This document shows positions 39,514-64,000 of a stretch of DNA of 64,000 bases, piece by piece. Positions within the stretch are counted from its first letter, which is position 1. Each line of letters starts with the position of its first letter. The DNA comes from Ascoidea asiatica JCM 7603 (Eukaryota; Fungi; Ascomycota): positions 112,028 through 176,027 of the forward strand of contig BCKQ01000015.1 of NCBI GenBank assembly GCA_001600695.1, read 5' to 3'. Below the pieces are notes generated by a model. It ran no database searches, was not told the origin of the DNA, and saw only the letters and a list, made by a program, of their open reading frames with translations. Position numbers and translations under genes: made by a program.

Positions 39514-39585
39514 TCCGATATAGTGTAACGGTGATCATACCTCGCTTTCACCGAGGAGACCCGGGTTCGACTCCCGGTATCGGAA
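39514..39585 (+). tRNA. tRNA-Glu(UUC)
   Basis: Complete cloverleaf; anticodon arm CCTCG-CTTTCAC-CGAGG. Confidence 0.96.
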
Positions 39586-39705
39586 TAGAAGCATGTTAAT
39601 TAACATTTTTCTTTATATTTTTTTTCAAGTTCTTGTCCTACAATTATATATTTTTTGCCCTAAATAAAAATTAAAAAAAAATAAAAATAAAACTAAAAAA
39701 AAGGA

Positions 39706-39799
39706 CTCCTCATTAGGGGCTCGAACCCTAGACATTTCGGTTGCTCGAAATTAACAAATCCCTAAAAGCCGAACGCTCTACCAACTGAGCTAATGGGGA
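39706..39799 (-). tRNA. tRNA-Lys(UUU) with intron
   Basis: Identical to 10837-10930. Confidence 0.95.
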
Positions 39800-40245
39800 T
39801 GAGTCCTGTTTCTTGGGTTTCCTTCAAGTTTACCAGATTAAACAAAAAGGGTCTTCTTCTGTAAGGGTCCTTTCATAAACCCTTTTTAGACCCTTTTTAG
39901 ACCCTTTTTAATTTTTTTAATTTTTTTAAGTTTTTTTTATGTTTTTACAATCCCCATTATTTGCTTTATATCCATTGGATTATATCCAGTTTTTCAAATT
40001 TCTTTGATTCTACAACTTAACAATTTCAATAATGATAGTCATGATTTTTTAAATCTAACGAAAGCTTGTATGTAGTTGTCAGCTATTAGACTTTACTTTG
40101 ATCTAAAGTTATTGCAAACATACATACACTTTTCATAATATCTTTTTTATTTTACACTATTTAACAAAAATTATAAAAATTCTGATTTTACTTTCTACCT
40201 ATATTGAAATCTAGAAGAAAATGTACATTAATATTATAGACAACA

Positions 40246-42126: not shown

Positions 42127-42460
42127 TATTTATTCTGGATTTACATTAAGTGAGTTTACAACTCTTACAACTCTTTCTTTTTGAATTGAGAACATTTTTG
42201 AATCATATATATTGTTTTAGAAACTGCAATGAAGTTTGTCTGGTAAACATTATTGGAACAATAGATAATAACTGATTAGAAAGAAGATGAAGAAGAAAGA
42301 GGAAAGAAAGAATAAATAAATAAATAAAGAATAAATAAATAAAGGTTACTTCAGAATGGTAAATATGAAAAAGAGAGCAGAAATTGTAAAATAAACAAGC
42401 AGCACGTGAACAAGGCACGTGATCCGCAAAGGTCAGGTGAAACGGCGGAGCCAGGTTAGA

Positions 42461-42625
42461 GGTACTTCTTAAGAGACCATAAGTTTGGGTGCCCTTAATT
42501 GAGGCCGCATAATTGGTACTCCTTGTTTGAGTCCAGGTAAATGGTACTTCTTATTTGAAACCATTGTTCTGGTACTTTTTATTTAAGCAGTAAGACCAAC
42601 TAATTGGAACTCCTTATTTGAATCC
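42461..42625. repeat. Degenerate minisatellite of about 27-28 bp, 6 units, core GGTACTYCTTATTTGARNCC
   Basis: Units start at 42461, 42488, 42515, 42543, 42571 and 42606. Confidence 0.8.
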
Positions 42626-43136
42626 ACGTTTATGGGTCTGACTACTACAGATATACTACTTCTGCTGAATGTATTTCTGTGGTTGTTCAGATATATTTCC
42701 AAAATAGAATTTATACCTTCTTTTTATTGTGTTTTATTTTTTTACGCGTCGCAAGAGAACAATAGAAATGCACTTAGTACAACCTGCTGTTTTATAGTGT
42801 GTGTAAGCACTCTTTTGTAATTCTATTTATTTAGACTTGTATTGATGATGGAATATAAATCATTTACAATTACTAGTACAAAGTTCTATGGAATAATATT
42901 TCTTGATAAGAAACTTTCTGTAAACTACAAACAAAGTACAACTAATTTTTTTCAATTGAATAAAATGTTTATAAAAGATAAATATGGAAAAAAATAGTAA
43001 ATAAATATAAATATATATATAATACGTAATATTTGATTATTCACAATCTATCAAAGAAATTACTTATTAAAAATAATACCTTTTAAAAGATTAGAATATC
43101 AATATTTTTATTTATTTATTTCTTTAAAGAATAAAT

Positions 43137-44246
43137 TTAACAAGAAGCACCTGAACCAGATGGAATACCAGAACATGTTTTTTTAGTTTTACCACCAGTA
43201 ATTGAAACTCCAGACCATGTCCAATCAGATGCACCTTTAACTAAAATATAAACTGGTTGTGCACTGCTAGCAACAGATCCAGTAACTTTTTCAATGGTTA
43301 AATCTGTAATTGGAACACCAGATGTTGCTGTACCAGTTGGAGAACCATTTTCATAATCACCTTCTATTACAATACCATATTTAGCAATATTACTCAAAGT
43401 AATATCTTTATATGAAACTCCAGTTACACTACCAGTTGCACCATAAACAGTTTTAATTCTAACACCATTATCTGAATCTTTAACAGTACAATCTGAAACA
43501 TAAACATTTTTAACAACATTATTACTTCTACCACCAACTGATCCAATAGAAATACCATGACCACCAGAACATGTATTACCAGAGAAATAAATATTTGTAC
43601 CTGAATTAACTGCTAAACAATCATCTTGATTTTTAATAACTGAATTTGTAATATGAATATTAGATGATGATCCAACATCAAATGCATCAGTATTATGACC
43701 TTTTGAAGTACCAGCAGAATTATCAAGTGTAATACTATCAACTGTTAAATCTGATGATGAATTAATTGAAAAACATTGAACTGGTGCATTTTTTATATTT
43801 AATCCAGAAACTTTTGAATTACTTTTAAGAGAATGTAAATAAACAAATTTTGGTTTTTTAACACCACCATTTGAACCTTTACCATCCCAATATTTAGCAC
43901 CATTACCATCAATTGAATGTCCAGATGCACCAGTAATTGTAATTCCAGATCCTGAAAATGACATTAATGGTCCTTCCCATGCTTTATAAGCAAAAGATGT
44001 TGCACCTTCAAATGTAACAGTTGTACCAGTTTTAAGACCAGTTAAATCTAATGTTTTACCTGCTGGAACTGTAACTGCATCAATAATAATTGATGTACAT
44101 GAAGCTTTAATAGAAGATAATGATGAAAAATTAGATGTTGTAACTGTACATGATGAACGTTTTTCTAAATCAGATCCAACTGGTGTACCAATAACAGCTG
44201 ATAAAAGTGTTAATAAAGCAGTAATTGAAGTGAATTTAAATTGCAT
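43137..44246 (-). CDS. PGU1: Secreted endopolygalacturonase (GH28)
   Basis: Signal peptide plus KR propeptide; catalytic motifs NTD, QDD, GHG, RIK. Confidence 0.97.
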   Translation of the reverse strand: MQFKFTSITALLTLLSAVIGTPVGSDLEKRSSCTVTTSNFSSLSSIKASCTSIIIDAVTVPAGKTLDLTGLKTGTTVTFEGATSFAYKAWEGPLMSFSGSGITITGASGHSIDGNGAKYWDGKGSNGGVKKPKFVYLHSLKSNSKVSGLNIKNAPVQCFSINSSSDLTVDSITLDNSAGTSKGHNTDAFDVGSSSNIHITNSVIKNQDDCLAVNSGTNIYFSGNTCSGGHGISIGSVGGRSNNVVKNVYVSDCTVKDSDNGVRIKTVYGATGSVTGVSYKDITLSNIAKYGIVIEGDYENGSPTGTATSGVPITDLTIEKVTGSVASSAQPVYILVKGASDWTWSGVSITGGKTKKTCSGIPSGSGASC

Positions 44247-46411: not shown

Positions 46412-48478
46412 ATGTCTAATTTAAAATGGGAAAATGATAATGAAAATTTTCAAATTGAAATTGTAATTTCAAGAGCAAAAAAAGTTAAATTACCAATTTT
46501 TTTATTATCTGAAAAGGAAAAATTATTAAATATTGCAAATTGTTCAGTTTTTGATGATCCTGAAATATTAAAAAATGAAATTGAAAGAGTAACTTCATTA
46601 AATGAAAAAGAAAATCAAAATTTTATAAGTTCTATTGATTCTTCAAAATGTTTACCGAATAGTTATTCTTGTATTAATACTGATTTAGGATTTTTACCTA
46701 AAAAAATAAAAAAAAAATATATACCTTCTAATAATGATATTGATAAAAATAATGATAAAGATTGTAATAATAATGATAATAATAATGATAATAATAATGA
46801 TAAAGATAATGATATTAATGACGATAAAGCTAACGAGAAAAAAGATGAAATATTCAGACATTCATTGGTTTTTATTTTAATTACTTATGGAAATGAAACT
46901 ATAAAACTTACTCCAGTAAAAGGTTCAATTTCAAATCCAATATTTAGAAAAGTAGTAAATTTTAATGTTAAAAATTACTCAAATAATATACTTATTGAAT
47001 TATTTTGCGATATTCCAAATTATTTAATTCCTAAGGAATATTTTGAAAAATATAAAGATGATTTTGATTTAAATTATCCAAATCAAGAAATATATATTGG
47101 AGAAAAAATCCTTTATTTAAATGAAGAATTTTTTAAAAATGATAGAAAAGCTAGAAAATTATTAAATAATAGTAATGTTCCACTTCTTGTTAATAATCCT
47201 GAACAAACTTCAACTTCATTTATTTCAATGTCAATAAAAGTTTTACCACCTTTTAAATTAAAAGAAGAGGAAATTAGTTTAAAAAATTTTAAAATTATGA
47301 AATTTATTGGTAAAGGAACATTTGGTGAAGTTTATCAAGTTTTAAAGAGAAATAATGGTAAAATATATGCTTTGAAAAGTATTGAAAAATTTCATATTAT
47401 AAAAAATATTGATAAAACAAACTATCATTCATATGAAACTGGAAATGGAAATGGAAATGAAAATGAAAATGAAATTCAAAATCAAAATCAAAATCAAAAT
47501 CAAAGAGAAGCAGAAATAGAAAAAGAAAAAAAAAATAAAATAATCAAAGCAATAATTGAAAAAAATATTTTAATGAAAATGAATAATCCTTTTATTATAT
47601 CATTACATTATTCTTTCCAAACTGTTAAAAAAGTTTATTTAATAACTGATTTTATTAATGGAGGAGAATTATTTCATCATTTAAGTAAAGAAAGAATATT
47701 TAATTTATATAGAAGTAAATTATATATTGCTGAAATTATATGTGCTTTAGAATATTTACATAATTCAAATATTATTTATAGAGATTTGAAACCAGAAAAT
47801 ATATTATTAGATCACCAAGGACATATAAAACTTTGTGATTTTGGATTAAGTAAGATTTCAGAACCAAATTTAAGAAAAAATAATGAAAATATAAAAACAA
47901 TTGCAAAAACATTTACATTTTGTGGATCTTCAAATTATCTGGCACCAGAAATTTTAAAACATAAAGGATATGATGAAAAAGTAGATTGGTGGGCATTAGG
48001 TATAATATTATTTGAGATGTTGATTGGTACTACACCATTTTATAAACCTAATTTAAATGAAATGATGAGATGCATAATTAATTCTCCACTTGAATTTCCA
48101 AAAGATTTTAATTCATCTGCTAAAGACCTTATTGAAAAATTATTGAATAAAGATCCTAATAAAAGAATTGGAGCAAATAATGGAAGTCAAGAAATTAAAA
48201 ACCATTCATTCTTTGAAAATTTGAATTGGAATAAAGTTATGAATAAAGAATATGAACCTTTATTTAAACCTGATGTAAAAGATGAAATTGATTGCAAAAT
48301 AATATCAAAATATTTGGAAGAAGTTGAAGAAACTGAAGAATTGAAAGAATTTCAAGAAAGGCTGGAAATCATTAAAGGAAAATATGAATATGAGTATTTA
48401 GGTAAATCTGATCAAGTTTTGTTCAAGAATTGGTCTTTTATAGGGGAAAGTGAATTTGAAAAACATCTGAAAGCTTGA
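46412..48478 (+). CDS. Divergent AGC kinase (Ypk1/Sch9-like)
   Basis: IGKGTFGEV, YALK, GGELFHHL, YRDLKPEN, LCDFGL, TFCG..YLAPE, C-terminal FKNWSF hydrophobic motif. Confidence 0.88.
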   Translation: MSNLKWENDNENFQIEIVISRAKKVKLPIFLLSEKEKLLNIANCSVFDDPEILKNEIERVTSLNEKENQNFISSIDSSKCLPNSYSCINTDLGFLPKKIKKKYIPSNNDIDKNNDKDCNNNDNNNDNNNDKDNDINDDKANEKKDEIFRHSLVFILITYGNETIKLTPVKGSISNPIFRKVVNFNVKNYSNNILIELFCDIPNYLIPKEYFEKYKDDFDLNYPNQEIYIGEKILYLNEEFFKNDRKARKLLNNSNVPLLVNNPEQTSTSFISMSIKVLPPFKLKEEEISLKNFKIMKFIGKGTFGEVYQVLKRNNGKIYALKSIEKFHIIKNIDKTNYHSYETGNGNGNENENEIQNQNQNQNQREAEIEKEKKNKIIKAIIEKNILMKMNNPFIISLHYSFQTVKKVYLITDFINGGELFHHLSKERIFNLYRSKLYIAEIICALEYLHNSNIIYRDLKPENILLDHQGHIKLCDFGLSKISEPNLRKNNENIKTIAKTFTFCGSSNYLAPEILKHKGYDEKVDWWALGIILFEMLIGTTPFYKPNLNEMMRCIINSPLEFPKDFNSSAKDLIEKLLNKDPNKRIGANNGSQEIKNHSFFENLNWNKVMNKEYEPLFKPDVKDEIDCKIISKYLEEVEETEELKEFQERLEIIKGKYEYEYLGKSDQVLFKNWSFIGESEFEKHLKA

Positions 48479-49044
48479 AGCAGTATTTAATTAATGACAA
48501 TTAATACATTTTTTTTGCTTTTTATCAATAAACATTTATTAAATAGCTGTAACTTGAATGTTTTACTGTTTTACTGTATTTGTATATTGAGCACAGGTAC
48601 CGAGTGTAGACACACACAAAAACAGCGGGTTGCACTAAGTGTATTTCCATTGTTCTCTTGCGACGCATAAAAAAATAAAAAACAACAAAAAGAAGGTGAA
48701 AGAATTCAATTTTGGAAATTCTTAACCAGACACAGAAATCCATTTGAATAATCATAAAATACTTGTTATACATACGTACGTTGTCTACTGACTATGATAC
48801 TATTCTCCATATTTGACATAGTTAAGTATCCTTCATTTACACTTTCTTCTTCTTTCCAAGCAGTTATATTAAACTATTCGAATAACGCTTAGCAAAGTCC
48901 ATTGGTTTTTTTTCAATAAATAATGTTATTTCTAATACAATTTAAATGACTCAAAAATGTTTTCAACTCAAAAAAAAGAGAAAGAGTTGTAAACTCACTT
49001 AAGCTTAAATACAAATTAAATCTTTTTTTGCATTCAGTAAATCA

Positions 49045-49150
49045 ATGATCAATAAACTTTCTCGTCATATTTCAAAACTAATATTTAAGTATATGACTTT
49101 AGATAAATGTTGATTATTTATTTTATTTGATAATATTAGTTTATACAAGG
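49045..49150 (+). pseudogene. 5' relic of the F-box/LRR gene
   Basis: Translates MINKLSRHISKLIFKYMTLDKC*LFILFDNISLYK versus MINKLPIHILKLIFNYITLDKCWLFTLSNNINIYK; TGA at 49111. Confidence 0.88.
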
Positions 49151-49746
49151 CTTTAACTAAGATATTTTAATTCCGGTGAAAATAAGAGTTCTTCAATTAG
49201 ATCCTAATATAAGGTAAATAAATTAAGCAAATTTAATTGAATTGAAGGCATTATATATAATAGATGATTTTAAAATAAAAAAACACATAACTTTGAATTA
49301 TGATCTAATATAAGGATATTCTTAACTTTTGTGTAATGGTCTAAAATTAAAAAGATCTTTTCAAGAAGAGTGTTGTGTTTGAGGTTTCTATATAACAAAG
49401 TAGGGTCCAATATATGGAGCTTGGAGGCTTTCTTGAAATATAAAAGATTACATTTATCATTATTGAGATTGTAAATTTATATGAATTCAAAAATTTCAAA
49501 AAAAATGGGATATGATTTATGTTTTAAATGGATAGGTAATCACTAAAAGAGTAATCCAGATTTCAACCAATATTTTCATAAAATATAGAAGAAATACAAG
49601 GAAATTGAATGGAATGAAAAAAGAATAAACATTCAAAATCATGTAATCTGAAAAAGAAAAAAATAAACCATTAAAAGAAATAGAAACAGAAGAGGACCCA
49701 TTTTTTAAAAACAGAAATTTCAAGGAGAACCAATAAACAGGACTCA

Positions 49747-49840
49747 TCCCCATTAGCTCAGTTGGTAGAGCGTTCGGCTTTTAGGGATTTGTTAATTTCG
49801 AGCAACCGAAATGTCTAGGGTTCGAGCCCCTAATGAGGAG
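49747..49840 (+). tRNA. tRNA-Lys(UUU) with intron
   Basis: Same sequence as the other three copies. Confidence 0.95.
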
Positions 49841-49971
49841 TCCTTTTTTTAGTTTTATTTTTTATTATTTTTAATTATTATCTAAGTTGGTTAGGGTAAA
49901 AAGTATAAAATTTCAGGACAAACAGTTAGAACAGGGAAAAAAAAAATAAACCTTCTGAATAGTAATTAGTG

Positions 49972-50043
49972 TTCCGATACCGGGAGTCGAACCCGGGTCT
50001 CCTCGGTGAAAGCGAGGTATGATCACCGTTACACTATATCGGA
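49972..50043 (-). tRNA. tRNA-Glu(UUC)
   Basis: Reverse complement identical to 39514-39585. Confidence 0.96.
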
Positions 50044-50165
50044 AAACCTTATAATTCTGTTTGGTTGTGTTTAAAGGTTGTCACGAGATGTTACTAAACC
50101 TATCACGTGTCTTGCTACTAATGTTTTGCTGGTGTTCCAGAGATAAAATCAACTAAGCATATTTT

Positions 50166-50181
50166 GCTGATTTAGCTCAGC

Positions 50182-50214
<33 letters not shown>

Positions 50215-50238
50215 TGTGTTCGATCCACAGAATTAGCA
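50166..50238 (+). tRNA. tRNA-Phe(GAA), intronless
   Basis: GCTGATTTAGCTCAGCTGGGAGAGCGTCAGA-CTGAAGA-TCTGAAGGTCCTGTGTTCGATCCACAGAATTAGCA. Confidence 0.96.
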
Positions 50239-51325
50239 GCTATTTTTTTTTAATTTGCTTTCTAATTGTTCTCCTCATTGTTATTTGTCAATCGTTTGTT
50301 GAAAGAAGGATTTTATGTGAAGATTTAAAGAACAAGTTTAAATTCCAAAAGAATATATTCATACTCAATTTGGTAAATAACAAGCTTTTTTGCTGTTATG
50401 TGTTTCAATCATCGATTATATTACTCTTAATTATATCAAAAAGTACAATTAAAATGGCAAATTTTGGTATCAAGAATTTAACTTGATGAGAATAATTTTA
50501 TAAACAAATCATAAGATTAAGTAAATATGATTTAACAAATTATATTTTAGATTGTAATATAATGGATGAAATGAAAAGTTGAATTCATTTCAATAAAATT
50601 ATTGCTTTTTAAAAAGACACTTTCATAAATTCAAATCCAAATCATGCAGATAATGAATTTAACTTTATCCCTATATTAAATTGAAGTTTAAAATCCAAAG
50701 TTTTATCAATTTTAGTTAAGGTTCCTTCAAAAATTATAATACTTTCTTACCAATAAAAATTTTAAAAAATGGTATCAATATTTAATACTTCAATAATATT
50801 TATATATAATCATCACATTTCAAAATTGAAGATACATGAAAAAAAAAATTCCGAAGATGAAAAATTAAAAAAAGGTAAACACTATATTAGTTTATTTTCC
50901 ATTGATATATGATTTTATTTTGAAATTGTTTAAACTAGGTAAAAGTGAAATCGATATTAAATAAAATAAAATAAAAAATTGAGACCAAAAGATTATTGGC
51001 TTTTAATGTAGAAAGAAAAATCTCAGGGTCTACTTTTTCAGCAAATATCTATCAACCTCTACTCAACTGTAGCTTCTATACACATTATTTCTATGTATTT
51101 ATTTGATTGAAAACTTACTGAAACAGGATTTCTTTCAAAATAATTTGAAGCAGATATTAAAAAGAAATCAACAGTTTCATCATTAGTAAAGGATATAGTT
51201 CAGAAATTAGATTTATTGAATTGAATCTCTATCAAAGAAAACTATTTTGTTTTGTGTATGTGTATCTACCCATCACTTATACGTTATATTGTCAATTCAG
51301 AGAAACTCCAAAAAGGCAACGAAAT

Positions 51326-51408
51326 GGAGGGTTGGCCGAGTGGTCTAAGGCGGTAGACTTAAGATCTACTGGGAAATTCCCGCGCGAGTTCGAACCTCGC
51401 ATCCTTCA
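51326..51408 (+). tRNA. tRNA-Leu(UAA)
   Basis: GGAGGGTTGGCCGAGTGGTCTAAGGCGGTAGA-CTTAAGA-TCTAC, variable arm, GTTCGAACC, ATCCTTCA. Confidence 0.96.
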
Positions 51409-51434
51409 TTCTTTATTTTTTTTCAGTGCTACTA

Positions 51435-53645
51435 TTTCAATGATCCGATTAAAGATGTTTCAATATCTTCACATAGAGATAATCTAGCTTTATTTGATAT
51501 TCCTCTAGGCTTAGATAAAGGTTTAGATTTTTCTTCTATATTATCTTTATCCGAAAAAACTAATAACAATAATGATTATGATGACGATAATAATAATAAT
51601 TTTGAAAATATTGCAAATATAGAAGATTTTAATGAAAATGATAACCGTATAATTGAATTGGATGAAAATTTAGATGATTTAGATATAAATTCAGATAATG
51701 ATGAAGCTAATGGTGAATATGGTGATTATAAATCAAAATCTTCAAAATTATCTAATCAGAACCAATCCGATAATAGAAAAAATGAAAATGATGAATTAGT
51801 ACCTCTTAATATTTCAATATCTTCTGCTTTAAAATCCGTTTCAAAATTAACAATTGAAAAATAAGAATTATGCTAATGTCGTTGATATTAATCATAAAAT
51901 TGATAATTTTAGTGATTTAGTACCAAATCCTACAAGAATTTGGCCTTTTGAATTAGATGTATTTCAAAAAGAAACCGTTTATCATTTAGAACAAAATGAC
52001 TCAGTATTCGTTGCTGCACATACTTCAATTGGTAAAACTGTTGTAGCCGAATATGCAATTGCTATGGCTCATAGAAATATGACAAAAACAATATATACAT
52101 CTCCAATAAAAGCTTTATGAAATCAAAAATTTAGAGATTTCAAAGAAATTTTCAAAGATATTGATATTGGTTTAGTTACTGGTGATGTTCAAATTAATCC
52201 TCATTCTGATTGTTTGATAATGACAACTGAAATTTTAAGAAGTATGTTTTATAGAGGTGCTGATCTTATAAGAGATGTAGAGTTCGTTATCTTTGACGAA
52301 GTTCATTATGTGAATGATATTGATAGAGGTGTAGTTTGGGAAGAAGTTATAATTATGTTACCTGAACATGTTAAATTTTTTTTATTATCTGCAACTGTTC
52401 TAAATACAATGGAATTTGCTGAATGGATTGGTAGAACTAAAAAAAAAGATATTTATGTGATTTCGACTCCAAAACGTCCAGTACCTTTAAAAATTTTAAT
52501 TTATACTAAAAAAAACAAGTATTCAAAGTTATTGATGGTCAACGAAATTTCAGTGAAATTCAATTTAAAAAACATAAAGAATTTTTTGAAAAAACTAATG
52601 AAAACTCAAATTATGATACTCGAGGAGGCCAAGGTAGCCAAAGAGGTGGAAAACCTGGAAATAATAATTATAGATCTGCTTGGGATGGTCCAAATAAAAA
52701 TACTTGGATTAATTTGGTTCAATTCCTTAAAATTAACAATCTTTTACTAGCTGTTATTTTTGTATTCAGTAAAAAAAGATGTGAAGAATATGCAGAAACT
52801 CTAATGAGTATAGATCTTACAACTTCTAAAGAAAAATTTCTTGTTAGAATGTTTATTGATAAAGCCGTTTCAAGATTGAAAAAAGAAGAAAGAGATTTAC
52901 CTCAAATTTTAAAAATGAGAGAATTTATAGCAAGAGGTGTTAGTGTTCATCATGGTGGTCTTCTACCAATTGTTAAAGAAGTTATTGAAAGTTTATTTTC
53001 AAAGTCTTTAGTTAAAGTTCTTTTTGCTACTGAAACTTTTGCAATGGGTTTGAATTTACCTACAAGAACAGTTGTTTTTGATAAACTAAAAAAAAACACA
53101 ACGGGATAAGTTTAAGAGATCTTTTACCTGGTAAATTTACTCAAATGTCTGAAAGAGCTGGTAGAAGAGGGTTAGATCCAATGGGTACTGTAATCGTAAT
53201 GACTTATAATAATCCTATAGATACAACCTCTTTCAAAAATGTAACGTTGGGAAATCCAACAAAATTGACTTCTCAGTTTAGGTTAACTTATATCATGATT
53301 TTAAATTTATTAAGAATTGAAGCTCTTAAAGTAGAAGAAATGATTAAACACTCATTCAGTGGAAATTCTTCAAGATATCTTCTTCCTGAACATGAAAAAA
53401 CTTTACTTAGTTTATAATTAAAAACAAAGCTAAAAGATATAAGCTCAAAATATGATAGTCAAGATTTTACTGATTGCCCTTACACTAAAGATGATCTTAT
53501 AAAAATGCATTCAATATTTACTGGTTATAATCTTTTAGTAACAGATATGGTAAAGAAGTCTTTCAGAAATCCTGTTCTTTTGAGAACATTTAAAGCTGGA
53601 AAATTAATTGTATTTGTGGATAATAATGGTTATTTAACACCAGGT
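51435..53645 (+). pseudogene. SKI2: Internal fragment of the SKI2 DExH helicase with multiple stops and frameshifts
   Basis: [83 protein letters not shown], spread over several frames. Confidence 0.92.
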
Positions 53646-53723
53646 AATTTTTGATCACGTTTTACTATTCAACAGAATAAAAAATTGAAAAAAAAAAAAG
53701 TGTTTGAAAATATCAAAAATATT

Positions 53724-53796
53724 TGGACAAGTCCGGAGTCGAACCGGAGACCTTCTGCACGCTAAGCAGACGCGCTACCAACTACGCCACATGCCC
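53724..53796 (-). tRNA. tRNA-Ala(AGC)
   Basis: GGGCATGTGGCGTAGTTGGTAGCGCGTCTGC-TTAGCGT-GCAGAAGGTCTCCGGTTCGACTCCGGACTTGTCCA. Confidence 0.95.
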
Positions 53797-55020
53797 AAAA
53801 CGATGTTTTTATTTTTATTATTAACACTAAGTTACAATGCGCTGTAAGAATTATTTTATTGCAATAAAATGATACGAAGTTGAATTGAGAAATATAAAGA
53901 AGAGCTTTGAATATTTCAGATTTGAAACAGTAAAATTAAATAATCAAATTCATTTTGCAAACATATGAATATGAACTTCATATTATAAGAAGAACCCATG
54001 TCAATATTAATTGCACCATACTTGCAAAGACTTGTTTAGCATCTTCAATTAATATGGAGCTCATTCTGGGTGCAAAAGGTCCGGGGTAAATTGAGGCCAA
54101 TAAAAAAAATAGGTACAGGATTTTCATATTATATTAATTTACTTGAGACAATAGAATTGAATGACTTAAATGTCCATGAAAATAGAGAGGATCTAGAAGC
54201 TAATATAAATGATCCAATAAACTGGATTTCTTCGTTGTAATCTATGCAACAACAATTAGGTTTGAAGATTAGTACTCTTATTTTTGAGGTTCCTTAAAGA
54301 ACAGCTCTTAATAGTGGAAGCCCTATTTTGAAATTACTAATATCGTATGTATCAGATTTATTATCTAAAAATTTATCAATTTCCTCATGCTTATTGGATT
54401 TAAATTTCACAACCGATATAATATTCAGAACAGAGTCCAGAAAGTTAGTTGACTCAAGGTTTTCAAATTTTATAAATAAGAGAGTAGGTATAAACACCAT
54501 AGATGTAATGAAGTTAATTTCGACTTGTAATCGATTTGATGTATCCTCCTTAGCTCAGTCTGGAAGTAGAAAATATTTATGATGAAAACAAAAAAATTTC
54601 AATATAAATTTTATAAAGGAATTATTTTCGGTGATTATTAGAAACTAATAAGTACCTTTTGTAGGAAATATGAAATCAATTACCATTGTTTTATTTTACA
54701 AAACATTTTCTTGAAGACCTTTTCTCTAGCAATATAACTGACTTATATTATCCTAATATATAGTTATTTCAGCATCTTTAACTCAATGATTATATTTTCC
54801 ATTACCCTTTCATATCTTAATCTTTATCTTGTTCATAGATTAAGAATACTGAATAATCTAATCATTAGCAAATATACAGTATAATAATTGTATCACAAAT
54901 ATCTAAATGAAAAAGAAAAAATCATGTTTGAAGTTTATCATAAAGAAGTCAACGCCACTAAAAGCTGGAAAAAAGAAGACAAGCAAGTAAAACACAAAAA
55001 AAATAATAAAAAATAAAGAA

Positions 55021-55099
55021 TGAAGGATGCGAGGTTCGAACTTGCGCGGAAATTTCACAGTAGATCTTAAGTCTACCACCGCCTTAGACTCGACCCTCC
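55021..55099 (-). pseudogene. Degenerate tRNA-Leu(UAA), inverted copy of 51326-51408 including about 35 bp of upstream flank
   Basis: D-arm deletions, a GGT insertion and a T-stem substitution; shared flank AATTCAGAGAAACTCCAAAAA..CAACGAAAT. Confidence 0.9.
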
Positions 55100-56222
55100 A
55101 TTTCGTTGTTTTTTTGGAGTTTCTCTGAATTAACAGTATGATCTTGCAACAGAAATGTATGATCTTGCAACAGAAATGCTTTCAATAAAAATTTTCTTTG
55201 TTTCAAATTCCTTACAAATGTTTCAATGCTTCAATGCTTCAATGCTTCAATGTTTAGAAAAGATTCCGCTCCGTGTCAGGATTATACTTTTCTAAATATC
55301 CGTAGTTGTTTCCGGGTGATTTCTTTTTATGTTTGGAACAGAATTAAAATGTTAATGAATTTAAACATTTTTAGATTTTTAGTTTTTTAAAATCATCAAA
55401 AGAAACAAGAAACTAAAAAAGTTTGAATCATGATTATAATTATAATTGACAATCATATTTATATTTCATTGTATTAAAACTTAAGTTTTTTCAATGATTT
55501 GGTAATCCTACTTTTATTTTAAAATATAATATTCATAAACATCTATGTTAAAAAGTATTTTGTGAAAAGGAAATTTAATTAATTTATCTTATAAAATTGA
55601 AAACAATATATAATAAGTTATCAAAACTGTGATTATTGTGATTATTGTTACTATTGTTATGATTATTCTAATTAACTTTTGAGAAAAAAAAAGGAGAGAA
55701 GTGAAAATTGATACTTGTAGCTTTGGTATTAGTGATAATTTTGTTTATCAACATCTTACTGAAAATAATGATAAAATTATTAGAACTTAAGTTATTATTA
55801 TCACCAAAAAAAGGTTGCATGAATTCTTTAATTCCATCTCTTTGATGTTTAATCTCAAGAGTTTAGATTAATGTTTTCTTCTCAAAAATCATTGATATTT
55901 TTTTTTTGCTTCTTTGAAATATTCTTTTCTCATAAATTTTATATTCTCTCAAGTGCTATTCATTTCATCTTATCTCATCTCATATATTTTATTCATATTT
56001 GAATTCTGTTAAAAAAAATCTTTAAAACGATAAGAAGAAAATCGATTTACAAATATTGCTATTAATTTAAAAAGAAAATAAAAACAGTTTATGTGATCTT
56101 TTGCTTTAATCTGTTTTATCTGCTTTATCCTTTAATTTATCTTATATCATTTGACTATATTCTATTTTGTTTATCACTTTATTTTTGTTTTTTTCTGAAT
56201 TATGGTACAAATTTAAGAATAT

Positions 56223-56408
56223 GTGAAATTTTTGAATGAAAAACTAGAGATAATTAAACAATTTACTCTTAGATCTATTATTGTTGGTTTAATTATTGGT
56301 TCTGTTGTTATAATTTCAATTTTTTTAATTTTTTTCACTGATGTTGAGAATGTATTTGTACAAAGTGTTGCAGTTGCAGTGGGTACTAGTCCTATAGCCT
56401 ATGGTTAA
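56223..56408 (+). pseudogene. Fragment of an OPT-family oligopeptide transporter (YGL114W-like)
   Basis: QFTLRSIIVGLIIGS joined to FTDVENVFVQSVAVAVGT; the normally intervening segment is missing and there is no ATG start. Confidence 0.75.
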
Positions 56409-56988
56409 AAACATTAAATACCTATGTTTTTACAATTTCTTGTTAACTTTCTGTTGTTACTTATCTCAAACAATCTAATTTACCAGATAATTCACTTATT
56501 TTTCTTACTAATCTGGGAATATACTGTATTTCAATTATTTATACTAATAGAAAACAAATTTCTATTTTTGCCACTTATAGTTTAGTTTAAGAAAATTTAA
56601 CTAAATTAATTTATGTCAAAATTTATTTATTATATTTACTGGTGATGTATTAATAATTGTACCAAAGTTATGTTTTATTTTTGATATATCAATTATCTCT
56701 TACATTAATTCAAATTTTTCTCAATTTAAAACAATTAAATTTGAAAATAAAAATCATCAGAAGCCTACTTTCTATTACATAACATTTTTATACATTATCA
56801 ATAAACAACTATTTTTACCTTTGAGACACACCATTGAATAAATTTTGAAATGGAAAAATTATTTCAATACTTCATGATTAAACAAGTTCTAATTCTAGTT
56901 CCAACTCCAATTATATAATTCAAACACTGAGTAATGTTTTGTTATAATAGCAAAATTTGACAAAGGAACAGCAAAAAAAAAATAAACA

Positions 56989-57012
56989 TGCTAATTCTGT
57001 GGATCGAACACA

Positions 57013-57045
<33 letters not shown>

Positions 57046-57061
57046 GCTGAGCTAAATCAGC
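56989..57061 (-). tRNA. tRNA-Phe(GAA), intronless
   Basis: Reverse complement identical to 50166-50238. Confidence 0.96.
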
Positions 57062-57183
57062 AAAATATGCTTAGTTGATTTTATCTCTGGAACACCAGCA
57101 AAACATTAGTAGCAAGACACGTGATAGGTTTAGTAACATCTCGTGACAACCTTTAAACACAACCAAACAGAATTATAAGGTTT

Positions 57184-57255
57184 TCCGATATAGTGTAACG
57201 GTGATCATACCTCGCTTTCACCGAGGAGACCCGGGTTCGACTCCCGGTATCGGAA
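57184..57255 (+). tRNA. tRNA-Glu(UUC)
   Basis: Identical to 39514-39585. Confidence 0.96.
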
Positions 57256-57387
57256 CACTAATTACTATTCAGAAGGTTTACTTTTTTTTTCCCTGTTCTA
57301 ACTGTTTGTCCTGAAATTTTATACTTTTTACCCTAACCAACTTAGATAATAATTAAAAATAATAAAAAATAAAACTAAAAAAAAGAA

Positions 57388-57481
57388 CTCCTCATTAGGG
57401 GCTCGAACCCTAGACATTTCGGTTGCTCGAAATTAACAAATCCCTAAAAGCCGAACGCTCTACCAACTGAGCTAATGGGGA
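57388..57481 (-). tRNA. tRNA-Lys(UUU) with intron
   Basis: Same sequence as the other copies. Confidence 0.95.
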
Positions 57482-58559
57482 TGAGTCCTGTTTATTGGGT
57501 CTCCTTGAAATTTCTGTTTTTAAAAAAAGGGTCCTCTTCTGTTTCTATTTCTTTTAATGGTTTATTGTCTTGAATTTATTGTTTAATTCTTTTCTTTTCT
57601 TTTTTTTTTGAGATTAAATGAAGTATTTTGAATTTATTTTTTATTAAATTCCTTTAATTTTATTAATCTACAATTTCAATAATAAGAACTGTATGCTTCC
57701 AGTAATGTTCTTTTCTATTCTTCCGTGAAAACAAAGAAAAGAATTCAAGAATAATAAATAAAGAATTCATTATAGTATTTAATCTGTATTCTTTTCTAGA
57801 AACATTATTTTTTCTTTTTTTTGTCAAAAGTTTTTAAATTTTGAATCTCATTAATTAAAAACCTTTGTTACTATACTTTTTTGTGAATATGTTTTTGATA
57901 AAACATTTAAAAATTTGAACAATTAACTCTCATAGAACTTTTTCATAGCCTACTAACTAGAATAATAAGTTCAATTTTAAATTCTAAATTCCATTGTTTT
58001 ATTATTATTATTCCAATTCATTGGGAAAAATTCTATTTTAAAACAAAAATTTTAATTTATGTGAATACACTGAACTTGGAAAACCTGTTTTAAGAAGAAA
58101 TACTATTACAACTCAACTGCTAGATAAATATATTGCTGTACAGACTTATTTACTCAGGTACCAGAACATTTTTATCTTTTCAATTTCATTAAAAATAGTT
58201 TTTCAAAATGTTTTTTTGAAAACTTTTTTTTATTTGAATTCTTTAAATAAATATCAAAAACTAAATATATGAATATCTCAATATTTCCAACATTTTAAAT
58301 TTTTATCTTTTCATCACTTATCAGTAATTACTTATTGTTCGCTTTTTTTATAAATTACTAATTAAACTTATTAATTGATTATTATCAATAATTAAAATAT
58401 AACTATTACTAGTAAAAATTAATAAATCCATTCACTCTTTTATAACATTTCAATTCCATATATCAATTTTTCTTTTATTAAAAACTAAAAGTGAATAAAT
58501 CTTTTTAGAACTAAAACAAAAATTTCAATACTTTTTTATTATAATTTTAAATTTCAAAA

Positions 58560-59129
58560 ATGTTTTCTTTAAAAATATTTTTATTAATTAATTGTTTATT
58601 ATTATTTTCTAATGCTTCTATTCTTTATTCAAGATCAGTAACTACTGTGACAACAAATTCCAACAATGATATAGTAAATGCAATTGTAGCTGCTTTACTT
58701 GATGTATCTTCATCAACTAATACAATAACTGATAATAAATCAAGCTCTTCAAATTCAGATTCAACAACAACAACAACAATAACAAATGATGATTTATATG
58801 TAGCTGATTATTTTACAAGCACACGAACAAGCACAAGTACCAGTACTAGTACCAGTACAAGTACAGGTACAAGCACATCCATAAGTACAATCTTAACTCC
58901 AATTTATTACACCAATTCATCTTTAAACACAAGTTATAATTATACTTCTTTAGATCTTAGTTTAGGAAATTTTTCATCCATATCTGTTCTGGATTTAACA
59001 AATGCTATTAATATCATTTATGAAGTTTCTTCTGCTGTAGCTATTGCTTCTTCAAAAACAAAAGTTAAAACCTCTGCTTCTAATGTTTCTGATTTTGCAA
59101 GCTCTCTTAAAAATTTATTAAAAAAATAA
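58560..59129 (+). CDS. Secreted Ser/Thr-rich protein of unknown function
   Basis: Signal-peptide-like N-terminus (…LLLFSNA), TS repeats, N-glycosylation sequons. Confidence 0.75.
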   Translation: MFSLKIFLLINCLLLFSNASILYSRSVTTVTTNSNNDIVNAIVAALLDVSSSTNTITDNKSSSSNSDSTTTTTITNDDLYVADYFTSTRTSTSTSTSTSTSTGTSTSISTILTPIYYTNSSLNTSYNYTSLDLSLGNFSSISVLDLTNAINIIYEVSSAVAIASSKTKVKTSASNVSDFASSLKNLLKK

Positions 59130-61414: not shown

Positions 61415-61711
61415 AAATAAATTTAAATTCCTATACGATTAATCAACCTATAATATATATAATAAAATACAAATTATTTTACATTTTGAAACTTTTAATA
61501 ATTAATCTTCAAGAATACTTAAATGAAATTGTTGATCCTAATTTTACCGAGATAAATTAAAGTTAATCTACGTAACACCGGTCGATTGTTTAAAAAGCAC
61601 CGTGGTTTATCTACGTAACACCAGTTTCTTTAATCAAGAAAACTAGTCACGTTATTTCCCGTTAAGAGCAAAGTATTTTTTCTACCGTCCCACTGGATTC
61701 CCGATTATGAT

Positions 61712-62131
61712 TGTTAATCATTTTATTCTTTTATTGGAATTGTCTTCGAATATTCTAGGCTATTCTTAGACTTTCTAAGATTGCATAGATTGTTTTACGA
61801 CTACATTCTATTGCGTTCTCAGAACTTCCGTGTGCATGTTAAATGTACTAAAACGTTCTGGGTCTGCATTATTTATTCTTACTTCGAAGGTCTGCGTGCA
61901 TCTCGAATGAACTGGAATCTTCGTGGTTGTTCTCAGAATGATGTAGTGTCTTCTAGAACAATACTTTATTTTATTTCTTTTCTTAAGTATGGGAAGTGAA
62001 CTTTCACATACTAAATTTACAAATTTATTCTTAAGATGGGTTACCCGCTCCTATTTTCCACTAATATAAATAGGGCACTTACCTCCCACATTTTTGATAT
62101 AATTTTTATATATTTTATATTTTCATTAACA
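61712..62131 (+). mobile_element. Probable retrotransposon LTR (420 bp)
   Basis: TG...CA ends with inverted termini TGTTAATCA/TCATTAACA, internal TATAAATA near 62066, higher GC than flanks; no TSD found. Confidence 0.5.
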
Positions 62132-62169
62132 ATTGTTTATAATTTGAATTAGATATCCTCTTGGTAATA

Positions 62170-62775
62170 ATTAGATATTTCGTTCAAACTACATTCAATT
62201 ACAACAACGCCACTACCCTAACTTTACGGAAAACACTCGGTGTTCCCAAACTCAAAACCTCCCTTGTTTCCAATCCGACCATCCTATTTAAAAACATTTT
62301 ATCTCCTAAACCGTGAAATGTGTTCCACTCAGATTTTTACAAAAATTACAAAAGTTTTGTTCTCTTATTGAAGGGCGGTAAACATGCAATCCCTTTTTAC
62401 CAATGGAACAAAATAATCGACGACTATGCCTTTTTTTTGTTAACAAACAATTAAACAAACACAAATCTCGTGACTATAAAACAAACACTTTCACAAATGT
62501 GGTCTCCAATGACCAACCAAAATATGTCATATGATACGTTTATGTGTATATCGCATGAAGATGCTCTGCCAACGCATTAACAAAATGTATTAGATAAGTC
62601 TATCTAGATGATATTTAATATTGTAAAAATACTGATTGAAGCTATATATTTTGAATTACTTCATGCTTAGCATTGACATTAAGTTTGATAATTAAGGGAT
62701 TACTGACTTATATAAATGGGATAAATCCTACGAATTGATTGGTAATGACACCTACGGCAGATTGATCAATTAGTG
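62170..62775 (+). pseudogene. Possible decayed gag-like coding relic following the LTR
   Basis: Broken frames such as KNYKSFVLLLKGGKHAIPFYQWNKIIDDYAF with coding-like composition; homology not verified. Confidence 0.25.
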
Positions 62776-64000
62776 TTTATTACACCATCCTTCTCTTCAC
62801 AAGCGGCATCGAAGACGTTTGGAATTGATAAAATAAAAGTTGAATTTTAATGATGGAATCATTTTGTTAAAAATATTGAATTGATTGAAATTCTTGAAAA
62901 TGGAATTTTATAATATTATATCAGTGACGTTATTGAATTAGTTTTTAAATTGAGTTGCTCTAAACTTTTATTTTCTTCTCTCTGATGTGATTCATTGAAT
63001 ATTAGATTACTTTTTTGTTTGATTCTTTAACTATTCTACGTGTCTGTAATGCCATTATTGTCTTATAGTATTATTATATAATTATTTAGTTTCCTTTTTT
63101 TCTTAGTTTCCTATTATATTATTATATTATCACATTATTATATTGTTATATCATTATATTATTATATTATTATACTGCTTTATTATTAAATTATTATAGG
63201 ATTATATGATTATATTGATATATTATTATACTGTTATTTTATTATATTATTAACTGATTATATTCTTCTATGATTATATGATTAATTGATTATATTATTA
63301 TATGATTATATTATTATACTATTGATTGAATAACTATCCAAATGATAGATTTGTATGAAAACAGAAAACGTAATTTCTATAATAGTAGTGATAAAAATTG
63401 CTTGGTAGTTAAAAAATAAAACACCATAGTAAAGTCACGAGGTTTACGATTTCTGATTTTCAATTTTAGAAAATCACGTGTTAACATTATATGAATTTGC
63501 TAACAAAATTTCGAAAAATGAGAATTTGATTAACAAAATTGAATAAAAATTTGAAATTAAATAAAATTGAATTGATAAAAACTACGATAAAAAAATAAAA
63601 TAAAAAGGTGGAATAAAAAGAATAACTCTGGAATGATCATTAGCTTTTGTTGATTAAGCTAATCTAGTTATTTTATAAAAATAGTGTGTATAAAACTTTT
63701 TATGATTGAAAATGATTTACTAACTTTTTATTTGAAAATTATTTGTGAATTTTATAAGTTTTTTAAGTAATATACTAAGGGAAATATAATGAATAGGTTC
63801 ATTATGATGGTGAATTAATGGGAAATTGAAAGATACTATTATTTATGAAAAATGAGTTGAATAATGTGAAAATTTTTGATGTTGAATAAATTGTCTTTTT
63901 TTTTTGATATACTTATTTGTTCTTTAATAATTGTTGAAATTTTGAATAATTAAATAAATTTTAAATGTTATTATTAATTCCTTCCTCCCTCTTCTGAAAA

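What the first reader, a model, noticed from the sequence alone, without database searches (positions are those of the whole stretch)
49662..57566. Nested tRNA-armed palindrome enclosing a graveyard of gene fragments
The outer arms are near-identical ~577-bp Lys-Glu-Phe cassettes whose homology stops exactly at the 3' end of tRNA-Phe. The inner arms are tRNA-Leu (about 51291-51421) and its decayed inverted copy (about 55008-55134). The 6.7-kb interior has no convincing intact protein gene, only SKI2 and OPT fragments and tRNA-Ala. The left arm is also the right end of the older 39.5-50.0 kb inversion, so the duplications are chained. An inverted repeat around a gene-free core with tRNAs is also reminiscent of regional centromeres (Komagataella, fission yeast). 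It may therefore be a tRNA-driven capture and rearrangement hotspot, or a centromere or boundary domain.
Basis: partly seen in the sequence, partly recalled or inferred. Interest (0 to 1): 0.82.

Follow-up and report, generated by a model that had tools for sequence, protein, structure and literature searches.

The report
tRNA-armed palindrome holding gene fragments
In an Ascoidea-like yeast, two almost identical inverted copies of a three-tRNA cassette enclose 6.75 kb with no working protein gene, only tRNAs and dead pieces copied from at least four genes elsewhere; it is a real but fairly ordinary scar of tRNA-anchored rearrangement, and probably not a centromere.

Summary
The arms 49664-50238 and 56989-57564 differ at 5 of 575 positions. 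Each carries tRNA-Lys(UUU, 21-nt intron), tRNA-Glu(UUC) and tRNA-Phe(GAA), and the homology stops at the discriminator base of tRNA-Phe. Inside lie an intact tRNA-Leu(UAA), its decayed inverted copy, tRNA-Ala(AGC) and no intact ORF.

The "graveyard" is larger than reported. It holds DNA-level copies of SKI2 (2.2 kb, 96%, three frameshifts), SEN1 (0.44 kb, 91%), an OPT promoter plus 5' end (0.65 kb, 87-92%) and an old FKS1-like piece (about 72-75%). Each comes from an intact gene on another contig, and their ages differ.

Contigs from two independent public studies carry the unique parts and the left-arm junctions, so an assembly artefact is unlikely.

The genome is a 20.3-Mb, AT-rich yeast of the order Ascoideales. 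Centromeres reported in that order are Ty5/LTR clusters or 26-34-kb AT-rich cores. This genome has copia clusters elsewhere, including on this contig, and none in the palindrome.

Best reading: recurrent ectopic recombination anchored in tRNA genes, with break repair that captured DNA fragments. This phenomenon is already known in yeasts. Other first-stage readers had already noted this same stretch.

The parts
49664..50238 (+). Left outer arm. It carries tRNA-Lys(UUU) 49747-49840 (+, 21-nt intron), tRNA-Glu(UUC) 49972-50043 (-) and tRNA-Phe(GAA) 50166-50238 (+).
56989..57564 (-). Right outer arm, the inverted copy. It carries tRNA-Phe 56989-57061 (-), tRNA-Glu 57184-57255 (+) and tRNA-Lys 57388-57481 (-). 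It differs from the left arm at 5 positions.
50239..51285 (.). Left spacer. It is unique in the genome, has no ORF, and shows no detectable similarity to the right spacer or to the contig-4 unit.
51286..51421 (+). Inner left arm: an intact tRNA-Leu(UAA) at 51325-51409 with its 39-nt 5' flank.
51441..53645 (+). SKI2 pseudogene fragment, covering residues ~146-903 of the 1282-aa parent at G000:C1:2318106-2320377. There are 71 mismatches in 2197 aligned bases, spread evenly over codon positions (29/22/20). It also has three frameshifting indels, a 72-bp deletion in the RGG repeat and a 6-bp in-frame insertion.
53723..53797 (-). tRNA-Ala(AGC), convergent with tRNA-Leu across the SKI2 fragment.
54125..54561 (+). 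SEN1 helicase fragment from the N-terminal domain (parent residues ~391-545). It is 90.6% identical to G000:C5:954229-954686.
54597..54829 (-). Old, decayed FKS1 (1,3-beta-glucan synthase)-like fragment, ~72-75% identical to G000:C2:621342-621568. It scores 73 bits, against at most 38 bits in 100 shuffles.
55008..55139 (-). Inner right arm: a tRNA-Leu(UAA) pseudogene that keeps the same 39-nt 5' flank as the inner left arm.
55755..56406 (+). OPT oligopeptide-transporter fragment: upstream non-coding DNA plus the first ~60 codons. It is 87-92% identical to G000:C6:483065-483938 and has three deletions that are not introns.
39514..39862 (-). Older cassette copy A (Glu + Lys, no Phe), inverted relative to the left arm. 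Its tRNA bodies are 100% identical to the left arm's and its spacers ~70%. Homology begins exactly at +1 of tRNA-Glu.
48610..49166 (+). Decayed inverted copy of the 5' end and upstream region of the LRR gene (matching 42033-42804). It forms the inner part of the older palindrome.

Best explanation
This is a tRNA-gene cluster in an Ascoidea-like yeast that has been rearranged repeatedly by ectopic homologous recombination or gene conversion anchored inside tRNA gene bodies. Its gene-free spacers have taken up pieces of genomic DNA from other chromosomes during break repair.

SHOWN: a unit Lys-Glu-Phe ... Leu(UAA) exists on contig 4 and twice here, in opposite orientations. The outer Lys-Glu-Phe parts of the two local copies are about 99% identical, while the inner Leu parts are 88% identical and one of them is dead. 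Homology ends exactly at tRNA ends. Four fragments of intact genes located elsewhere (SKI2, SEN1, OPT, FKS1-like) lie in the core, with sharp junctions, different ages and neutral decay.

INFERRED: tRNA genes, which are multi-copy identical sequences and known replication-fork pause sites, act both as the homology anchors and as the break-prone sites. The outer arms were either duplicated recently or homogenised by intrachromosomal gene conversion after the SKI2 piece arrived. The fragments entered by end joining or template switching, not through RNA. The arms are long and similar enough to let the core invert by recombination, but nothing in the core would be regulated by that. The only working parts are the tRNA genes.
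For: ARMS AND NESTING.

BOUNDARIES AT tRNA ENDS. The homology of the young arms ends at tRNA-Phe position 73. The homology of the older arm starts at tRNA-Glu +1, with unrelated sequence directly upstream. This is what is expected if the junction lies anywhere inside a tRNA gene that was already present at both sites.

CASSETTE FAMILY. tRNA bodies, including the Lys intron, are 100% identical among the local copies. Spacers are 97.9% identical for B-C, ~70% for A-B/C and ~64% against contig 4. A further direct copy lies at 10645-10955; it is 97% identical to A and has a dead tRNA-Glu.

SAME UNIT ON CONTIG 4. Lys-Glu-Phe, then 1.5 kb, then Leu(UAA). The right spacer is weakly collinear with it.

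FRAGMENTS. Their parents are intact ORFs on C1, C5, C6 and C2 with no tRNA genes nearby. SKI2 substitutions are spread 29/22/20 over codon positions, and the fragment has three frameshifts. The OPT piece includes upstream non-coding DNA, and the segments it lacks have no GT..AG ends. The 66-72 bp that the SKI2 fragment lacks is in-frame RGG-repeat coding sequence. Junctions show 0-2 nt of microhomology.

DIFFERENT AGES. Divergence is 3.2%, 9.4%, about 8-13% and about 25%.

SECOND SINK. The contig-4 spacer holds a 220-bp, 90%-identical internal piece of a 744-aa ORF from C7.

PRECEDENT. [quoted passage not shown] The mechanisms proposed there are recombination between tRNA copies, fork stalling and capture at break repair (PMC2675101).
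Against: No direct evidence of breaks, fork pausing or gene conversion at this locus.

The left spacer (50239-51285) has no similarity to the right spacer or to contig 4. A single ancestral inverted duplication of the whole Lys-Glu-Phe...Leu unit therefore needs later replacement of that spacer. Alternatively, the inner and outer pairs arose separately.

Not every tRNA spacer holds fragments: the 3.2-kb spacer around the cassette at 10.8 kb shows none at high identity. The 'sink' idea rests on two loci, not on a genome-wide test.

The dating (arms younger than the SKI2 capture) rests on 5 differences and on assumed neutrality.
Confidence: 0.7

Rival explanations
1. The structure is, or lies within, a regional centromere of the inverted-repeat type: a gene-free mid-core flanked by IRs, with tRNA genes as boundaries, as in Komagataella, Candida tropicalis, Barnettozyma or fission yeast.
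For: The IR plus the 6.75-kb core without an intact protein gene is the largest gene-free gap in the window, about 10 kb from 48478 to 58560. Centromere structure changes quickly among budding yeasts, and IR types recur (PMC12711049; PMC5010909). A copia RT relic lies about 26 kb away at C15:195 kb.
Against: Centromeres reported in the same order are Ty5 clusters (S. fibuligera) or 26-34-kb AT-rich cores with LTR relics (S. schoenii, by Hi-C). This genome has copia-RT clusters on most large contigs and three sites on C15 itself, but none in the window.

The core has 21-32% GC and is not an AT peak; the AT extreme of the region is at 40.5-42 kb. The arms are only 0.58 kb. The core is made of recent ex-coding DNA of different ages and two apparently intact Pol III genes. 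The other copies of the cassette are not arranged as IRs.
Confidence: 0.05
2. It is a programmed invertible (flip/flop) segment, like the IR-flanked MAT regions of Ascoidea rubescens, Ogataea or Pachysolen, whose orientation controls expression of something.
For: The 575-bp, 99%-identical inverted arms lie 6.75 kb apart. The sister species A. rubescens uses 2-kb IRs for MAT flip/flop (PMC6692504).
Against: There is no intact protein gene, no MAT gene and no gene end inside or at the arm borders. Only tRNA genes are present, and their Pol III expression should not depend on orientation. No telomere or Ty cluster is adjacent within the window. Short-read contigs cannot phase across the arms, so there is no evidence for two orientations.
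Confidence: 0.05
3. The gene fragments are retro-copies: cDNA made by a Ty reverse transcriptase and captured beside tRNA genes. They are not DNA-level copies.
For: The genome has many copia elements and a solo-LTR-like repeat 4 kb to the right. cDNA capture at breaks, and Ty targeting beside tRNA genes, are proposed in PMC2675101. The SKI2 and SEN1 pieces lie in intron-free coding sequence and so cannot discriminate between the two routes.
Against: The OPT piece starts about 0.5 kb upstream of the start codon, in AT-rich non-coding DNA, and the segments it lacks have no GT..AG ends; one of them is coding. The SKI2 and SEN1 pieces are internal, cut at both ends inside the ORF, and have no adjoining poly(A).
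Confidence: 0.07
4. It is a composite or foldback mobile element whose terminal inverted repeats are the tRNA cassettes, carrying captured gene pieces in the manner of a Pack-MULE or Helitron.
For: Terminal inverted repeats around a mosaic of gene fragments.
Against: There is no target-site duplication at 49663/57565. No transposase or RT ORF was found, no second copy of the arms plus core exists anywhere in the 20.3-Mb assembly, and all non-tRNA, non-fragment core sequence is single-copy.
Confidence: 0.03
5. The inverted repeat is an assembly artefact.
For: The right-arm junctions were not checked against reads, and contigs cannot span the arms.
Against: The arms differ at 5 positions and the core is unique. 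Contigs from two independent studies match the unique parts exactly and bridge the left inner junction. They also end 30 nt into the arm, as a true repeat would make them do.
Confidence: 0.02

Closest known systems
tRNA-associated evolutionary breakpoints and gene-gain sites in the Saccharomyces lineage (Gordon, Byrne and Wolfe 2009, PMC2675101)
   Same: Rearrangement boundaries and newly arrived DNA sit beside tRNA genes. The mechanisms proposed there (recombination between near-identical tRNA copies, fork stalling, capture during break repair) fit the exact tRNA-end boundaries and the sharp-edged fragments seen here.
   Different: Here the arrivals are dead sub-gene fragments rather than whole functional genes. 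Several of different ages are stacked in one 5-kb stretch. The tRNA genes themselves are duplicated as multi-gene cassettes in inverted pairs. No Ty LTR lies at the junctions.
Inverted-repeat centromeres of budding yeasts (Komagataella phaffii PMC5010909; Candida tropicalis; Barnettozyma, PMC12711049)
   Same: Inverted repeats around a unique core of a few kb that has no protein gene.
   Different: The arms here are 0.58 kb rather than about 2-4 kb and consist of tRNA genes. The core is built of recent pseudogene pieces and active-looking tRNA genes. The structure is not repeated on other contigs. Relatives in the same order have Ty5-cluster or AT-rich centromeres. Cse4 binding is untested.
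Fission-yeast centromeres with tRNA genes in the imr inverted repeats (PMC2288823; tRNA boundary function is from my own knowledge)
   Same: tRNA genes lie inside inverted repeats that flank a central domain.
   Different: There are no outer heterochromatic repeat arrays. No Argonaute/Piwi domain was detectable in this genome. The scale is about ten times smaller.
Flip/flop invertible MAT regions (Ascoidea rubescens, Ogataea, Pachysolen; PMC6692504)
   Same: Near-identical IRs that can invert the DNA between them. The example is in the sister species.
   Different: There are no MAT genes or any other intact protein gene here, and no adjacent silencing region. Inversion has not been shown.
Capture of DNA fragments at repaired double-strand breaks in S. 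cerevisiae (mitochondrial DNA, Ty cDNA, genomic pieces; my own knowledge, and reference 48 cited in PMC2675101)
   Same: Short pieces (0.15-2.2 kb) of unlinked DNA with sharp junctions and little or no microhomology.
   Different: Those are laboratory events at induced breaks. Here they are fixed in a natural genome and clustered at one locus.

Membership tests
IR-type regional centromere of budding yeasts | Binding of Cse4/CENP-A and kinetochore function | not testable with these tools
   No ChIP or Hi-C data were reachable. The runs found are DNA contigs only.
IR-type regional centromere of budding yeasts | Inverted repeats of a few kb around a unique gene-free core | tested here: inconclusive
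   An IR and a gene-free core are present, but the arms are 0.58 kb of tRNA genes and the core is pseudogene debris plus two tRNA genes.
IR-type regional centromere of budding yeasts | One comparable structure per chromosome | tested here: not met
   None of the other cassette copies seen is paired as an IR. They lie at C4:1.412 Mb, C4:1.454 Mb, C15:122.7 kb and C15:151.5 kb, the last being the arm of the older palindrome. Instead, copia-RT clusters occur on most large contigs.
Ty5-cluster / AT-rich regional centromere (the type reported in Ascoideales) | Cluster of Ty5/copia elements or LTRs, or the chromosome's AT-rich peak, in a gene desert of about 17-34 kb | tested here: not met
   No PF07727 hit in the window. 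The LTR-like repeat occurs only at 61708-62198, plus one 38-nt partial match at 11329-11364, and nowhere in the palindrome. Core GC is 21-32%, not a trough.
tRNA-associated rearrangement / gene-gain hotspot | Duplication or rearrangement boundaries coincide with tRNA genes | tested here: met
   The boundaries fall at tRNA-Phe position 73 and tRNA-Glu +1.
tRNA-associated rearrangement / gene-gain hotspot | Foreign (ectopic) DNA inserted beside tRNA genes | tested here: met
   Four fragments lie within 32-620 nt of tRNA genes or pseudogenes in the core. One more lies beside tRNA-Leu on contig 4.
tRNA-associated rearrangement / gene-gain hotspot | Statistical enrichment genome-wide | not tested
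   This needs the whole assembly, but only about 50 kb outside the window could be fetched. One control spacer (9462-12691) holds no high-identity fragment.
Processed (retro-)pseudogene | Loss of parental introns, 3' end with poly(A), no promoter DNA | tested here: not met
   The OPT piece carries upstream non-coding DNA. The missing segments are not introns. The SKI2 and SEN1 pieces are internal and have no poly(A).
Flip/flop mating-type switch | MAT genes at the ends of the invertible region, next to a silencing domain | tested here: not met
   There is no intact ORF and no Pfam hit other than the SKI2 pieces in the core.
Transposon with terminal inverted repeats | Target-site duplication, a transposase or other copies | tested here: not met
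   No target-site duplication. The core is single-copy and the arms' other copies lack the core.

The most novel reading that the evidence does not exclude
tRNA clusters in this AT-rich yeast may be systematic landing pads. Pol III-linked fork collapse at tRNA genes would repeatedly trigger template switching or end joining that pastes in sub-gene pieces of distant, often long, housekeeping genes (SKI2, SEN1, FKS1, OPT). Intrachromosomal gene conversion would keep the functional tRNA cassettes of a palindrome identical while everything between them decays. If general, this would be a natural, genome-wide record of templated insertions targeted to Pol III genes, and the palindrome would also flip between two orientations.
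Probability: 0.2. Interest if true: 0.55.

Novelty: new member of a known kind. Interest (0 to 1): 0.3.

Why it matters
It is a clean natural example of how tRNA genes shape yeast chromosomes. Duplication boundaries fall on the first or last base of a tRNA gene, cassettes are copied in inverted pairs, and a gene-free pocket collects dated pieces of other genes. It offers a datable series of events (about 25%, 12%, 9%, 3% and 1% divergence) at a single locus in a little-studied order with unusual genetics (CUG reassignment). For annotation, it warns that the SKI2, SEN1, OPT and FKS1 matches here are dead fragments, and that ARAGORN's default output mislabels the intron-bearing tRNA-Lys(UUU). 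It does not open a new kind of biology unless the centromere or the 'systematic landing pad' reading proves true.

Tried and rejected
- Dictyostelid origin. This was my first guess from base composition. It was rejected by fungal Zn2Cys6, Bmt2 and GH28 domains and long intron-free ORFs, and by the best SKI2 hit, Ascoidea rubescens at 64%.
- Retro-copy origin of the fragments. The segments 'missing' relative to the parents looked like introns but are an in-frame RGG-repeat deletion and plain deletions without GT..AG.
- Residual homology between the left and right spacers. Sensitive BLASTN gave only AT-rich noise, apart from a weak collinear match of the right spacer to contig 4.
- Synteny with A. 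rubescens. The nearest kinase homologue is only 40% identical. Its neighbourhood has LRR genes but no tRNA genes and no clear orthology, so this was uninformative.
- Whole-contig scan of C15 for other IRs and Ty clusters.
- Listing all tRNA genes of the genome. Only 63 of 1728 candidates were scored.
- Small-RNA reading. No Piwi domain was found in the assembly; absence in a draft assembly is weak evidence.
- Bacterial promoter/terminator scan. No enrichment, and it is irrelevant for a yeast.
- Evidence for a flipped isoform. Short-read contigs cannot phase across 575-bp arms whose innermost difference is 292 nt from the inner border.
- The look-up of encoding contigs for the window's GH28 protein. 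Not on record.

Full report
WHAT GENOME THIS IS. The window is G000:C15:112028-176027 of a 20.3-Mb, 71-contig assembly. It is very AT-rich: coding DNA is about 25-33% GC and spacers about 7-20%. Its long intron-free ORFs carry fungal Zn2Cys6, Bmt2, GH28, ferric-reductase and kinase domains. The intact SKI2 gene of the genome (L023:4967-8815, minus strand, 1282 aa) has Ascoidea rubescens as its best named relative at 64% identity, followed by other budding yeasts at 52-58%. I therefore treat it as a yeast of the order Ascoideales, probably another Ascoidea species. The species name is not proven.

- Outer arms: self-BLAST gives 49662-50251 against 57566-56974, 98.65% over 593 nt. The alignment shows a core of 575/576 bp (49664-50238 and 56989-57564) with five differences, none inside a tRNA body.
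- tRNA content: each arm carries three tRNA genes. The first is tRNA-Lys(UUU) with a 21-nt intron at the canonical 37/38 position. ARAGORN's default mode calls it Leu(tag) and its intron mode calls it Ala. With the 21 nt removed it calls tRNA-Lys(ttt), with one C·A mismatch in the acceptor stem.
- Inner boundary: identity ends after the discriminator base of tRNA-Phe, and the two downstream T-runs are unrelated.
- Inner pair: 51286-51421 against 55139-55008 is 87.8% identical. The left copy is an intact tRNA-Leu(UAA). The right copy has a 4-nt deletion in the D arm and further substitutions, and no tRNA finder sees it. The two copies share the 39-nt 5' flank more closely with each other (4 differences) than with the contig-4 copy, the only other copy whose flank could be read (about 9), so they are true local sisters.
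- Older palindrome: 39514-39862 matches 50043-49686, and 42033-42804 matches 49138-48610.

NOT AN ASSEMBLY ARTEFACT. Three public runs from two studies (2016 and 2023) hold 84-88% of the sampled 31-mers of 49000-58200. I laid their contigs on 49300-55299, keeping to the 6,000-letter limit.
- Unique segments match with zero differences.
- One contig bridges the arm/core junction (50209-51353 in X1; 50209-51310 in X2). Others bridge the left and right edges of the SEN1 piece and the inner-right arm.
- The contig coming from the left flank stops 30 nt into the arm, as expected where two different flanks enter one repeat.
- Contigs laid on the SKI2 piece with 'other letters' are the parental copy.
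- The right-arm junctions were not examined. Short-read contigs cannot tell the orientation of the core.

WHAT THE CORE IS MADE OF. A DNA search of the core against the whole assembly, refined by BLAST against fetched parent loci, shows that the non-tRNA matches are pieces of genes that sit intact on other contigs.
- 51441-53645 is 96% identical to residues ~146-903 of SKI2 on C1.
- 54125-54561 is 90.6% identical to the N-terminal domain of SEN1 on C5.
- 55755-56406 is 87-92% identical to the upstream region plus first codons of an OPT transporter on C6.
- About 54597-54829 is 72-75% identical, on the opposite strand, to FKS1 on C2. This match is weak but well above shuffles (73 bits against 38 or less).
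- Pfam identities of the parents are, and protein-level matches.

The SKI2 piece is dead. It has 71 mismatches in 2197 aligned bases, spread 29/22/20 over codon positions. It also has three frameshifting indels, a 72-bp deletion and a 6-bp in-frame insertion. The parents have no tRNA genes nearby. The remaining core sequence is single-copy and has no ORF of note.

DNA COPIES, NOT RNA COPIES. The gaps relative to the parents first looked like lost introns. The SKI2 gap is in-frame coding sequence of an RGG repeat. The three OPT gaps have no GT..AG ends, and one is transmembrane coding sequence. The OPT piece also begins about 0.5 kb upstream of the start codon. The SKI2 and SEN1 pieces are cut inside the ORF at both ends, without poly(A). 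Junctions are sharp, with 0-2 nt shared.

ORDER OF EVENTS (INFERENCE). The divergences are:
- FKS1-like: about 25%
- inner Leu pair: 12%
- OPT: about 8-13%
- SEN1: 9.4%
- SKI2: 3.2%
- outer arms: 0.9% overall, about 2% in spacers

The pieces therefore arrived at different times, and the arms were last identical after the SKI2 piece had arrived. There are two possibilities. An old inverted duplication of the whole unit Lys-Glu-Phe...Leu may have had its outer cassettes homogenised later by gene conversion. Or the second cassette may have been copied in recently. The same unit on contig 4 (Lys-Glu-Phe, 1.5 kb, Leu(UAA)), and the weak collinearity of the right spacer with it, favour the first. 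The complete lack of similarity of the left spacer is unexplained under it.

WHY I THINK tRNA GENES ARE THE ANCHORS. Two independent homology boundaries fall on the terminal base of a tRNA gene. The young arms end at tRNA-Phe position 73. The older arm A begins at tRNA-Glu +1, with unrelated DNA directly upstream. tRNA bodies, including the Lys intron, are 100% identical among the local cassette copies, while spacers are 98%, about 70% and about 64% identical. If a recombination or conversion junction lies anywhere within a tRNA gene that was already present at both sites, the visible homology ends exactly at the gene's end. A break at a random place would not give this.

There is also a direct pair: the cassette at 10645-10955 is 97% identical to A, and its tRNA-Glu is dead. 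The sister unit on contig 4 carries, 136 nt from its tRNA-Leu, a 220-bp piece that is 90% identical to the interior of a 744-aa ORF on contig 7. Fragment capture beside this tRNA unit has therefore happened at two loci. A control spacer around the 10.8-kb cassette has none. All this fits what is known for the Saccharomyces lineage, where breakpoints and gene-gain sites are about three-fold enriched at tRNA genes (PMC2675101).

THE CENTROMERE IDEA. It was reasonable a priori. Budding-yeast centromeres change structure quickly, and IR types recur (PMC12711049; PMC5010909). The evidence here points elsewhere.
- In the sister genus, putative centromeres are Ty5 clusters (S. fibuligera, cited in the preprint 10.1101/2025.04.25.647736) or 26-34-kb AT-rich cores with LTR relics located by Hi-C (S. 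schoenii, PMC13148404).
- In this genome, a six-frame search for the copia reverse transcriptase finds clusters of mostly broken copies on most large contigs. Examples are C11:577-634 kb, C7:754-822 kb, C14:290-358 kb, C4:1494-1551 kb and C1:1936-1965 kb.
- On C15 itself, copies lie at 195, 336 and 358 kb, but none lies in the window.
- Other first-stage readers independently flagged gene-free copia islands elsewhere in this genome as centromere candidates. These are unchecked notes, consistent.
- The core is not an AT trough, the arms are short, and the cassette's other copies are not arranged as IRs.
- I found no Piwi domain, which removes the fission-yeast-like RNAi component, with the caveat of a draft assembly.

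I put the centromere reading at about 5%. Only Cse4 ChIP or Hi-C can close it.

OTHER READINGS.
- A programmed flip/flop switch, as at MAT in A. rubescens (PMC6692504), lacks any gene to switch.
- A transposon lacks a target-site duplication, a transposase and other copies.
- Passive inversion of the core by recombination between the arms is likely in principle but could not be seen here.

VERDICT. The mechanism most consistent with the anatomy is recurrent tRNA-anchored ectopic recombination plus capture of genomic DNA at repaired breaks. It is a new instance of a known kind of yeast genome dynamics, of moderate interest.

UNEXPLAINED. A contig joint 51418->53724, with only 29 letters on the shorter side, appears in runs X2 and X3. 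It would excise the SKI2 piece exactly from the tRNA-Leu trailer to the tRNA-Ala 3' end. It may come from another Leu/Ala locus, from an adapter chimera (Nextera-like letters occur in X3 loose ends), or from an allele without the insertion. I could not decide.

Noticed in passing
window 61708-62198: A ~491-bp dispersed repeat with at least 35 copies at 92-95% identity on many contigs. Its end resembles an LTR tip (...CAACA), so it is probably a solo LTR. It lies 4.1 kb right of the right arm.
   Followed up: partly
window 62586-64000: This stretch is 84-88% identical to at least four other loci (C29, C8, C1, C32). It is a multi-copy element or gene family and was not identified.
   Followed up: no
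window 10645-10955: A further Glu-Lys cassette copy, direct and 97% identical to the one at 39512-39824. Its tRNA-Glu has a 4-nt deletion in the anticodon stem, so it is a pseudogene.
   Followed up: yes
window 51418 / 53724: Contigs of runs X2 and X3 show a joint that skips 2305 bp, exactly the SKI2 piece with its short flanks. Only 29 letters lie on the shorter side. It could be another locus, a chimera or an insertion-free allele.
   Followed up: no
window 40246-42126 (-) and 40500-41160: A 626-aa LRR-protein ORF lies in DNA of only 7-10% GC and has a 66-bp periodic repeat (6 copies). It has many 66-70% paralogues across the genome.
   Followed up: no
window 43137-44246 (-): This GH28 polygalacturonase belongs to a young family. 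Five paralogues are 81-89% identical at the DNA level, one of them only 6 kb left of the window.
   Followed up: no
window 26834-26936 (-): tRNA-Ser(GCU) with a 21-nt intron. It is found only when ARAGORN is run with introns allowed.
   Followed up: no
L027:5556-5907 (G000:C4:1410555-1410906): The spacer of the sister tRNA unit holds pieces, 90% and 79% identical, of the interior of a 744-aa ORF without a Pfam domain on C7:684.6-685.2 kb.
   Followed up: yes
window 12306-12386: A short dispersed repeat of about 55-75 bp with at least 20 copies at 81-92% identity on many contigs.
   Followed up: no
window 7925-9461 (-): Two adjacent ORFs (262 and 219 aa) match the C-terminal and N-terminal halves of one sugar transporter. 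This is probably a gene split by a frameshift or an intron.
   Followed up: no
L006 (G000:C19:228892-232033): Five tRNA genes lie within 1.5 kb, including a divergent inverted pair of tRNA-Leu(UAA) 485 bp apart. Part of this locus reads N because it is withheld.
   Followed up: partly
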